Of a DNA stretch of 64,000 nucleotides, positions 16,168-18,248 are shown in pieces. Below the pieces are notes generated by a model. The model made no database searches and was not told where the DNA came from. It worked only from the letters and a program-made list of their open reading frames with translations. The position numbers were made by a program, and so were the translations under genes. The stretch comes from Stylophora pistillata. Lineage: Eukaryota. The DNA lies in contig NW_019217954.1 in the NCBI RefSeq assembly GCF_002571385.2, positions 129,698 through 193,697 on the forward strand. The letters run 5' to 3'. The stretch's first letter is position 1. Each line of letters opens with the position of its first letter.

Positions 16168-18248
16168 GTAGTAATAACAATAATAATAATAAGGGGACAA
16201 TAAGGGGGATGATCTACAACATGCACGGTTTTCATTACCGAGTCCACTTTGATCTTCTCCATTGTCTCTACAGTTTCTTCAGCTGCCTGAGCCAACAACG
16301 GCTGCATGGTCTCTAATTCTTCCTGTAGCTTCTCCACTTCATCAGCTGTACNGGGTCAACATATACCACAATCTCTACTCGTTACCTGGTGGGAGTAACA
16401 TAGTTGTGGCGGGTCAACATATACCACAATCTCTACTCGTTACCTGGTGGGAGTAACATAGTTGTGGCGGGTCAACATATACCACAATCTCTACTCGTTA
16501 CCTGGTGGGAGTAACATAGTTGTGGCGGGTCAACATATACCACAATCTCTACTCGTTACCTGGTGGGAGTAACATAGTTGTGGCGGGTCAACATATACCA
16601 CAATCTCTACTCGTTACCTGGTGGGAGTAACATAGTTGTGGCGGGTCAACATATACCACAATCTCTACTCGTTACCTGGTGGGAGTAACATAGTTGTGGC
16701 GGGTCAACATATACCACAATCTCTACTCGTTACCTGGTGGGAGTAACATAGTTGTGGCGGGTCAACATATACCACAATCTCTACTCGTTACCTGGTGGGA
16801 GTAACATAGTTGTGGCGGGTCAACATATACCACAATCTCTACTCGTTACCTGGTGGGAGTAACATAGTTGTGGCGGGTCAACATATACCACAATCTCTAC
16901 TCGTTACCTGGTGGGAGTAACATAGTTGTGGCGGGTCAACATATACCACAATCTCTACTCGTTACCTGGTGGGAGTAACATAGTTGTGGCGGGTCAACAT
17001 ATACCACAATCTCTACTCGTTACCTGGTGGGAGTAACATAGTTGTGGCGGGTCAACATATACCACAATCTCTACTCGTTACCTGGTGGGAGTAACATAGT
17101 TGTGGCGGGTCAACATATACCACAATCTCTACTCGTTACCTGGTGGGAGTAACATAGTTGTGGCGGGTCAACATATACCACAATCTCTACTCGTTACCTG
17201 GTGGGAGTAACATAGTTGTGGCGGGTCAACATATACCACAATCTCTACTCGTTACCTGGTGGGAGTAACATAGTTGTGGCGGGTCAACATATACCACAAT
17301 CTCTACTCGTTACCTGGTGGGAGTAACATAGTTGTGGCGGGTCAACATATACCACAATCTCTACTCGTTACCTGGTGGGAGTAACATAGTTGTGGCGGGT
17401 CAACATATACCACAATCTCTACTCGTTACCTGGTGGGAGTAACATAGTTGTGGCGGGTCAACATATACCACAATCTCTACTCGTTACCTGGTGGGAGTAA
17501 CATAGTTGTGGCGGGACAACTCAGCCAGGTATTGCTTTGACTTTTGAGCCACTGTCTGATGAATAACTCCACATATTGACACCTGTCAGTCAACAAATAG
17601 TTGAAAAGAAGACTGTTAGAGATCCATAGTGATTCTGTAAACTGAAGTTACATGTTGCTGGAGCTTGATTCTCTTAAGTTAGAAGACACATATCAGTTGT
17701 ATCTCTGAAATGACGGTGCTTATCGCCAAACAGACACCAAAAGCTATGTAAATGCAAAACCTGTTAAAAGGACACATCGTCGTGTTGTATGATTGACCGA
17801 TCTCACGAGTATCAAAAAATTGTACAAATTCTGCGTCTGTTCTTTTTTCAGACACTAAGTCACTCTATTTCGATGGCCGAGTCAGCTAATATTAAAATGA
17901 GACTTTTAAGTCATGTAATTAAAATCAGGGCATACCAAGCCTTCCATTGCCGAAGATTCATCCAGTTCGGGAATTTCTCCGAGGAAGGTCGACGCCACGG
18001 ATCGTAAGGCCTCCTTCGGCCAAGCGGAGAACCAATCAATGGTACAGCAGTTGACCAAAGACGGAAATTGGCGAAGACGTGCTCGGAATATTTCACCAAT
18101 TGGGCTACAAGAGATACATATATCTTATTAGACGTTCTGTTGTGTAGTATCGCTGAGTATTTTTACGAGTTGCACCGTATTTTGACGAGCCCGTAGGGCG
18201 AGTTAAAATACAAACAACGAGTAAAAATACTCGCGATACTACACAACT

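What the first reader, a model, noticed from the sequence alone, without database searches (positions are those of the whole stretch)
16353..17520. Minisatellite made of a dynein exon/intron junction: 19 consecutive 58-nt GT..AG units (candidate recursive-splicing ladder or intron gain by duplication)
Seen: in gene orientation the exon ends ..GAG TTG TCC CGC CAC AAC TAT GTT ACT CCC ACC AG|GTAACG ([11 protein letters not shown]). Its last 28 nt plus the first 30 intron nt are repeated 20 times without variants. The duplication breakpoint is a microhomology, GTTGTCCC (exon) versus GTTGACCC (intron). Each unit therefore reads GTAACGAG...TTGAC...TTACTCCCACCAG: a donor, a branch-like TGAC about 26 nt upstream of the AG, a pyrimidine-rich tract and CAG, followed directly by the next GT. 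Reading past the first donor meets an immediate stop (ACC AGG TAA), so any later donor used alone gives a truncated protein. Known: tandem duplication of AG|GT is a proposed intron-gain mechanism, and AG|GT ratchet points mediate recursive splicing. Inference: the array is either removed stepwise as zero-length exons, acts as 19 decoy donors that lower DNAH1 output in a copy-number-dependent way, or is an assembler loop.
Basis: partly seen in the sequence, partly recalled or inferred. Interest (0 to 1): 0.78.

Follow-up and report, generated by a model that had tools for sequence, protein, structure and literature searches.

The report
Splice-donor minisatellite in coral dynein intron
A coral dynein motor gene carries a real, probably length-variable run of 58-base repeats that copies its exon/intron junction about 11 to 20 times into the intron, but mature RNA uses only the first junction, as in several known human genes, so it is ordinary.

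Summary
Window 16353-17520 is 20 identical 58-nt units plus 8 nt on the minus strand. Each unit is the last 28 nt of a DNAH1-orthologue exon plus the first 30 nt of its intron.

The array is not a pure assembler loop. In two independent DNA data sets the 58-nt cycle has 15.8 and 11.0 times the k-mer depth of the single-copy flank. The unit occurs nowhere else in the 398-Mb assembly. A third study's RNA reads contain unit-to-unit junctions.

The assembly is still wrong here. The array abuts a single 'n', and beyond it the sequence resumes in mid-exon. About 36 DNAH1 codons are missing from the whole assembly, although RNA reads splice into them. The figure of 20 copies and the far end of the array are therefore unverified.

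In cDNA, 12 reads join the first donor (17488) to the missing exon, and none cover the intron part of a unit.

This is a known kind of feature: minisatellites whose first monomer spans an exon/intron boundary (human F7, CBS, IFI6, LMNB2, PDGF), where the most upstream donor wins. Intron gain is excluded by the sequence. Recursive splicing cannot be tested with junction reads and has no support. The scan's first readers noted similar splice-site minisatellites elsewhere in this genome (unchecked).

The parts
17488..17582 (-). 95-nt DNAH1-orthologue exon ([31 protein letters not shown] + AG), at the end of the AAA4 region before the stalk. Its last 28 nt form the exon part of the repeat unit.
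   Evidence: The upstream splice joint 17580/17934 (cut +2) is seen in 4 reads of X21 and 10 of X24. The donor at 17488 is used in 12 X24 reads. The exon aligns to human DNAH1 residues 2776-2805.
16353..17520 (-). 58-nt minisatellite: 20 identical units plus 8 nt. The first unit spans the exon/intron boundary. There are 20 identical CAG|GTAACG donors at 17487 minus 58k.
   Evidence: The 88-nt cyclic contig (58+30) has depth 1835 against flank 116 in X1, and 259 against 23.5 in X2. Seven X21 RNA reads 'go back 58'.
17430..17487 (-). First complete GT..AG unit. It has one branch-like TTGAC, with its A 30 nt from the donor and 28 nt from the AG. The tract before the AG is 63% pyrimidine.
   Evidence: The two RNA-confirmed acceptors of neighbouring introns have 70% and 56% pyrimidines.
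16352..16352 (.). Single 'n': a true assembly break. It hides the rest of the intron and about 36 codons (about 104 nt) of coding sequence.
   Evidence: The exons on either side align to human DNAH1 2776-2805 and 2842-2876. RNA reads run from 17488 into letters absent from the window and from the whole assembly.
16239..16351 (-). 3' part of the next coding exon (..[37 protein letters not shown], stalk coiled coil 1), followed by the donor GTAATG.
17583..17935 (-). Upstream 353-nt intron, single-copy. It serves as the depth and splicing control.
   Evidence: the joint is read in X21 and X24; DNA depth is 116.3 (X1) and 23.5 (X2); RNA depth is 0.
17936..18104 (-). Upstream exon in the AAA4 region (Pfam AAA_8).
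   Evidence: Joints on both sides. PF12780, E = 6e-10.

Best explanation
This is a genuine intronic minisatellite, probably a VNTR, whose first monomer spans the exon/intron boundary of the coral DNAH1 orthologue.

Origin (inferred): a 58-bp segment, made of 28 nt of exon end and 30 nt of intron start, was duplicated in tandem at a short microhomology (CCC within GTTG[T/A]CCC). It then expanded by slippage or unequal exchange to roughly 11-20 identical copies.

Why the protein is unaffected (shown): all extra copies lie downstream of the authentic donor, so they only lengthen a pre-existing intron. Mature mRNA joins the most upstream donor (17488) to the next exon, and the 19 or so identical pseudo-donors leave no trace in cDNA.

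Why the first donor wins (by analogy, not shown here): this matches the 5'-to-3' preference for the first of a series of identical donors shown experimentally for human F7 IVS7.

Assembly (shown and inferred): the short-read assembly could not traverse the array. It stopped at an 'n', lost the rest of the intron and about 36 codons, and its figure of 20 copies is at best an estimate.
For: 20 identical units. The unit is found only at this locus in the 398-Mb assembly. The cyclic 88-nt contig has depth 15.8x (X1, 2024 study) and 11.0x (X2, 2016 study) of the adjoining single-copy contig. Seven sense-oriented RNA reads from a third study contain the unit-unit junction. Twelve cDNA reads join 17488 to letters that continue the frame as SYLELLGTFR. 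cDNA depth is 0 on 17420-17479 against 13.3 and 10.4 on the exon (all). The gene is DNAH1-like, and the alignment gap of about 36 residues sits exactly at the 'n'. The missing exon is absent from the assembly. The described class behaves the same way (PMC1557585).
Against: DNA evidence is k-mer depth of Logan contigs, not raw or long reads, so copy number is approximate, and allelic variation (15.8 against 11.0 against 20 in the assembly) is suggestive only. The far end of the array was never seen: the cyclic contig is not broken at the exit predicted from the assembly. Transcripts using later donors would carry a stop and could be removed by nonsense-mediated decay, so low-level use is not excluded. 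In random-primed RNA (X21) the array is covered near exon level per copy, partly in the opposite orientation, while neighbouring introns have 0 (about 14 reads). Neutrality does not predict this.
Confidence: 0.8

Rival explanations
1. Stepwise or nested (recursive-type) removal. Every unit boundary is CAG|GTAACG, so the spliceosome could join a donor to a unit-end AG one or more units downstream. That join regenerates a donor, and the array would be removed in several steps. A transcript first spliced from a late donor could also be repaired this way.
For: Each unit has a donor, one branch-like TTGAC 28 nt before the AG, and 63% pyrimidines, within the range of two confirmed acceptors of the same gene. 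The final mRNA is unit-free. Array RNA is over-represented in total RNA compared with neighbouring introns, which slow multi-step removal could explain.
Against: There is no positive evidence. Junction reads cannot show it, because the product equals the genomic sequence. The donor-to-branch distance within one unit is only 30 nt, short for known spliceosomes (my own knowledge), so single-unit steps are unlikely. Ratchet points are described in long introns (PMC8605326), whereas this array is about 1 kb. The one-step route from the first donor explains everything seen.
Confidence: 0.08
2. Dosage modulator. The identical pseudo-donors bind U1 or are used at a low rate, giving stop-containing transcripts that are degraded, so DNAH1 output falls with copy number.
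For: There are 20 donors identical over 58 nt. A stop follows directly after read-through. Depth differs between samples, suggesting length variation. In human IFI6 and CBS the first two pseudo-sites are used (PMC1557585).
Against: No cDNA read covers the intron part of a unit, at an exon depth of 10-13. [quoted passage not shown] There are no expression data by allele.
Confidence: 0.07
3. Assembly artefact. The genome has one unit, or a single duplication, and the assembler or gap closer looped through it.
For: The copies are perfectly identical, the array ends exactly at an 'n', the contig end falls at the point where the cycle and exit paths would diverge, and the assembly demonstrably lost sequence here.
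Against: Cycle depth is 11-16 times the flank in two independent studies. The unit is found nowhere else in the assembly. The unit-unit junction is read in RNA from a third study. At most the number 20 is artefactual.
Confidence: 0.03

Closest known systems
Human F7 intron 7 37-bp VNTR, and the related cases listed with it: IFI6 (6-16) intron 2, CBS intron 13, LMNB2, PDGF intron 4 (Borensztajn et al. 2006, PMC1557585)
   Same: The first monomer of the minisatellite spans the exon/intron boundary. The authentic donor is reiterated identically in the intron (5-26 times in the human cases, about 11-20 here). Mature mRNA uses the most upstream donor, and copy number varies between alleles.
   Different: The host is a cnidarian and the gene a dynein heavy chain. 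The unit is 58 bp and carries 28 exon nt (F7 carries 4), so each unit also ends in a plausible acceptor (CAG). Polymorphism and silence of the pseudo-sites are inferred here from depth and one cDNA run, not from genotyping or mutagenesis.
Intron creation by tandem duplication of an exonic AGGT (Rogers model; Hellsten et al. 2011, PMC3265369; potato RdRp case, PMC4974935)
   Same: A tandem duplication carrying AG|GT is tolerated because splicing removes the extra copy and restores the original mRNA.
   Different: The duplicated segment here already contained an exon/intron junction. The 30-nt part is non-coding and would place TAA in frame. No new intron arises; an old one is lengthened.
Drosophila ratchet points / zero-nucleotide recursive splice sites (PMC8605326)
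   Same: An acceptor and a donor are juxtaposed (CAG|GTAACG) inside an intron.
   Different: Ratchet points are single, conserved sites in very long introns, with strong pyrimidine tracts and demonstrated intermediates. Here the sites are by-products of a young repeat about 1 kb long, and no intermediate was shown.

Membership tests
Exon/intron-boundary-spanning minisatellite (F7 IVS7 type) | Head-to-tail array whose first monomer contains the end of the exon and the start of the intron | tested here: met
   the unit is 28 exon nt plus 30 intron nt, and the array starts inside the exon at 17520.
Exon/intron-boundary-spanning minisatellite (F7 IVS7 type) | Authentic 5' splice site reiterated with identical sequence in the intron | tested here: met
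   20 exact copies of the 30-nt donor segment, all at this locus.
Exon/intron-boundary-spanning minisatellite (F7 IVS7 type) | The array exists in the organism's DNA and is not only in the assembly | tested here: met
   cycle contig depth is 15.8x and 11.0x the flank in two studies, and RNA reads of a third study contain unit-unit junctions.
Exon/intron-boundary-spanning minisatellite (F7 IVS7 type) | mRNA made from the most upstream donor (or the first few); downstream pseudo-sites silent | tested here: met
   12 X24 reads join 17488 to the next exon, and depth is 0 on the unit's intron part. Sensitivity is about 1 in 13, and nonsense-mediated decay could hide rare use.
Exon/intron-boundary-spanning minisatellite (F7 IVS7 type) | Copy-number polymorphism between alleles | tested here: inconclusive
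   Depth ratios are 15.8 (X1), 11.0 (X2) and 20.1 in the assembly. These are contig k-mer depths only, and no allele was sized.
Recursive splice site (ratchet point) | Juxtaposed functional acceptor and donor, AG|GT | tested here: inconclusive
   The motif is present 19 times. The donor is proven functional only for the first copy, and acceptor function is untested.
Recursive splice site (ratchet point) | Splicing intermediates (junction reads, sawtooth depth, lariats) | not testable with these tools
   A donor-to-unit-AG join reproduces the genomic sequence, so junction reads carry no information.
Recursive splice site (ratchet point) | Location in a very long intron | tested here: inconclusive
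   Intron length is unknown because of the gap at 16352. The array itself is only about 0.6-1.2 kb.
Intron gain by tandem duplication of exonic AGGT | The duplicated segment is ancestral exon sequence, and the new intron lies where none was before | tested here: not met
   The 30-nt half of the unit is absent from the mRNA and gives TAA in frame. The mRNA continues with the conserved SYLEL motif, so the intron predates the duplication.
Assembler or gap-closer loop | Reads support only one or two units | tested here: not met
   depth ratios of 11-16.

The most novel reading that the evidence does not exclude
The array is more than a passenger. Either its roughly 20 identical donor/acceptor junctions are processed by nested re-splicing, giving a natural self-healing ladder, or array length tunes DNAH1 output. 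Exon-boundary minisatellites may also be unusually common in this coral: three other unchecked first-reader notes in the same genome describe them.
Probability: 0.08. Interest if true: 0.55.

Novelty: new member of a known kind. Interest (0 to 1): 0.25.

Why it matters
There are two practical points. First, the DNAH1 gene model of this coral assembly is broken here: about 36 codons of the motor's stalk base are missing, and any annotation across the 'n' will be wrong. Second, the locus is a natural series of identical 5' splice sites outside vertebrates. It could test whether the 'first donor wins' rule established for human F7 also holds in a cnidarian, and it would serve as a 58-bp-step VNTR marker for colony genotyping. 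It does not open a new mechanism.

Tried and rejected
The distal edge beside the 'n' was therefore not examined.
- Missing exon not found. The letters that RNA reads carry beyond 17488 were searched in the window, the whole assembly and JGI metagenome contigs, with 0 matches. This only tested whether the exon sits elsewhere. I did not fill the 'n' or reconstruct the gap.
- Unit-unit junction in metagenome contigs: 0 matches.
- Second single 'n' at 23131: no adjacent tandem array, so there is no general 'array beside n' pattern in this window.
- Coding potential of the array: none. The period is not a multiple of 3, and all frames are closed every 27 codons or less.
- RNA structure of three units: -51.1 kcal/mol against -40.5 +/- 4.2 for simple shuffles. 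This is modest and not informative.
- The big protein searches were not used, and exons were searched one by one by reference.
- Findings look-ups by several words gave nothing.

Full report
**Observation.** On the minus strand, window 16353-17520 is a tandem array of period 58: 20.1 copies, no indels, score 2329. A script shows 20 byte-identical units plus an 8-nt partial unit that differs at one base, T versus A at 17516. In gene orientation the exon ends ...YVTPT + AG at 17488 and is followed by GTAACG. The unit is the last 28 nt of that exon plus the first 30 nt of the intron. There are 20 identical donors and 19 complete GT..AG units. Reading through the first donor gives ACC AGG TAA, an immediate stop, and no frame stays open in the array.

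- A 161-aa open stretch at 21282-21764 scores 135 bits to human, mouse and other DNAH1 chains. The next best hits are 107 bits (Chlamydomonas DHC2) and 92 bits or less for all other dyneins. It carries dynein AAA-lid domains.
- The focal exon is 17488-17582, with both borders supported by RNA. It aligns to human DNAH1 residues 2776-2805.
- The coding sequence immediately after the 'n' at 16352 aligns to residues 2842-2876.

About 36 codons are therefore missing exactly at the 'n', and the sequence after it begins in mid-exon.

**Is the array real?** I laid two DNA data sets (Logan contigs; X1 from a 2024 study, X2 from a 2016 study) and two raw RNA runs (X21, X24) on 17420-19200. That stretch holds only 1.65 units, because the tool turns away long repeats.
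- In both DNA sets an 88-nt contig maps at 17428-17515. Its length is 58 + 30, the signature of a closed 58-nt cycle at word size 31.
- Its depth is 1835.3 against 116.3 for the adjoining 657-nt single-copy contig in X1, a ratio of 15.8. In X2 it is 258.8 against 23.5, a ratio of 11.0.
- The 30-nt intron part of the unit occurs 20 times in the 398-Mb assembly, all in this array, so the excess depth belongs to this locus.
- In X21, seven reads 'go back 58'. They contain a unit-to-unit junction and have the same orientation as the exon reads.

The array is thus present in three independent studies. An assembler loop on a single unit is excluded. The exact number 20 is not established: the depths suggest roughly 11-17 copies per haploid genome and hint at length variation.

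**The assembly break.** In X24, twelve reads run from 17488 into letters that are not in the stretch and continue the frame as SYLELLGTFR, the conserved continuation of this dynein motif. Those letters are absent from the window, from the whole assembly and from JGI metagenome contigs. The 'n' therefore marks a real discontinuity that lost the rest of the intron and about 104 nt of coding sequence. I did not fill it. That is an inference. In the Logan graph the cycle is not broken at that point, so the true distal end remains unseen (note).

**Splicing.**
- In X24 (cDNA) the exon has depth 13.3 and 10.4, while the intron part of the unit (17420-17479) has 0. All 12 junction reads place uniquely on the authentic exon.
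- Mature mRNA is thus exon|next exon, with no unit retained, at a sensitivity of about 1 in 13. Transcripts from later donors would carry a stop and might be degraded.
- In X21 (random-primed RNA) the array stub has depth 9.9 plus 4 in the other orientation, while the single-copy introns have 0.
- Corrected for copy number, this is still near exon level. It rests on about 14 reads and I leave it unexplained. Slow removal, a stable excised intron or antisense RNA are all possible.

**Interpretation.**
- *Intron gain by duplication is excluded.* The 30-nt half of the unit is not in the mRNA and would put TAA in frame, so the intron existed before the duplication. An old intron was lengthened by about 19 x 58 nt.
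- *Recursive splicing is unsupported.* It cannot be tested with junction reads, because joining any donor to any unit-end AG recreates the genomic sequence. The unit has one branch-like TTGAC 28 nt from the AG, and its tract before the AG is 63% pyrimidine, against 70% and 56% in two confirmed acceptors of this gene. The donor-to-branch distance within one unit is only 30 nt, which from general knowledge is short for a spliceosome. Nothing requires more than one step.
- *Decoy donors leave no trace in cDNA.*

**Comparison with the known.** A literature search found Borensztajn et al. 2006 (PMC1557585). [quoted passage not shown]
- F7 intron 7: 37 bp, 5-9 copies, only the most upstream donor used.
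- LMNB2: 100 bp, 10-15 copies, only the authentic donor used.
- PDGF intron 4: 81 bp, 16-18 copies.
- IFI6: 25 pseudo-sites, with the first two used as well as the authentic donor.
- CBS intron 13: 15-20 repeats, with two pseudo-sites used.

[quoted passage not shown] The coral array meets the defining features of this class. Copy-number polymorphism remains suggestive only. It differs in host, gene and unit length, and in carrying enough exon (28 nt, ending CAG) that each unit also looks like an acceptor. The Rogers/Hellsten duplication model (PMC3265369, PMC4974935) shares only the principle that splicing heals the duplication. Ratchet points (PMC8605326) share only the AG|GT motif.

**Context from the scan.** First-reader notes in the same genome, unchecked, report other minisatellites at splice sites. 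Another agent's note names the coral Stylophora pistillata. I verified neither.

**Verdict.** This is a real intronic minisatellite of a described kind, beside a genuine assembly error. It is a new member of a known kind, of low to moderate interest.

Noticed in passing
window 16352 and the gene model around it: The assembly lacks about 36 codons of the DNAH1 orthologue (human residues about 2806-2841), although RNA reads splice into them. Any gene model across this 'n' will be wrong.
   Followed up: yes
window 18080-18380: An intronic element with summed contig depth of 10^5 to 8x10^5 in both DNA runs (flank about 110 and 23). It is transcribed in both orientations, with many variant letters and rearranged joints, so it is a very high-copy repeat family.
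   Followed up: no
window 19163-19194: A 32-nt stretch with RNA depth 60-90 in both RNA runs, against 0-5 on neighbouring exon sequence. Consistent loose ends lie on both sides and all reads show T>A at 19184. It looks like a short match to an abundant unrelated transcript.
   Followed up: no
window 23131 and 23200-23300: A second single 'n', inside an intron and next to a tRNA-like (SINE-like) sequence. ARAGORN does not call it a tRNA, and no tandem array adjoins it.
   Followed up: partly
window 14858-15325 (+): A 155-aa open frame with a Cys/His-rich motif inside a dynein intron. It has no Pfam match and may be a remnant of a mobile element.
   Followed up: partly
window 55601-55673 (-): ARAGORN calls a tRNA-Thr (GGT). 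I did not examine whether it is a gene or a tRNA-derived repeat.
   Followed up: no
window 47044-47557: A 262-nt unit repeated twice at 89% identity.
   Followed up: no
window 17420-17515, run X21: In random-primed RNA the array is covered near exon level per copy, and about 30% of those reads have the opposite orientation, while neighbouring single-copy introns have no reads. This rests on only about 14 reads.
   Followed up: partly
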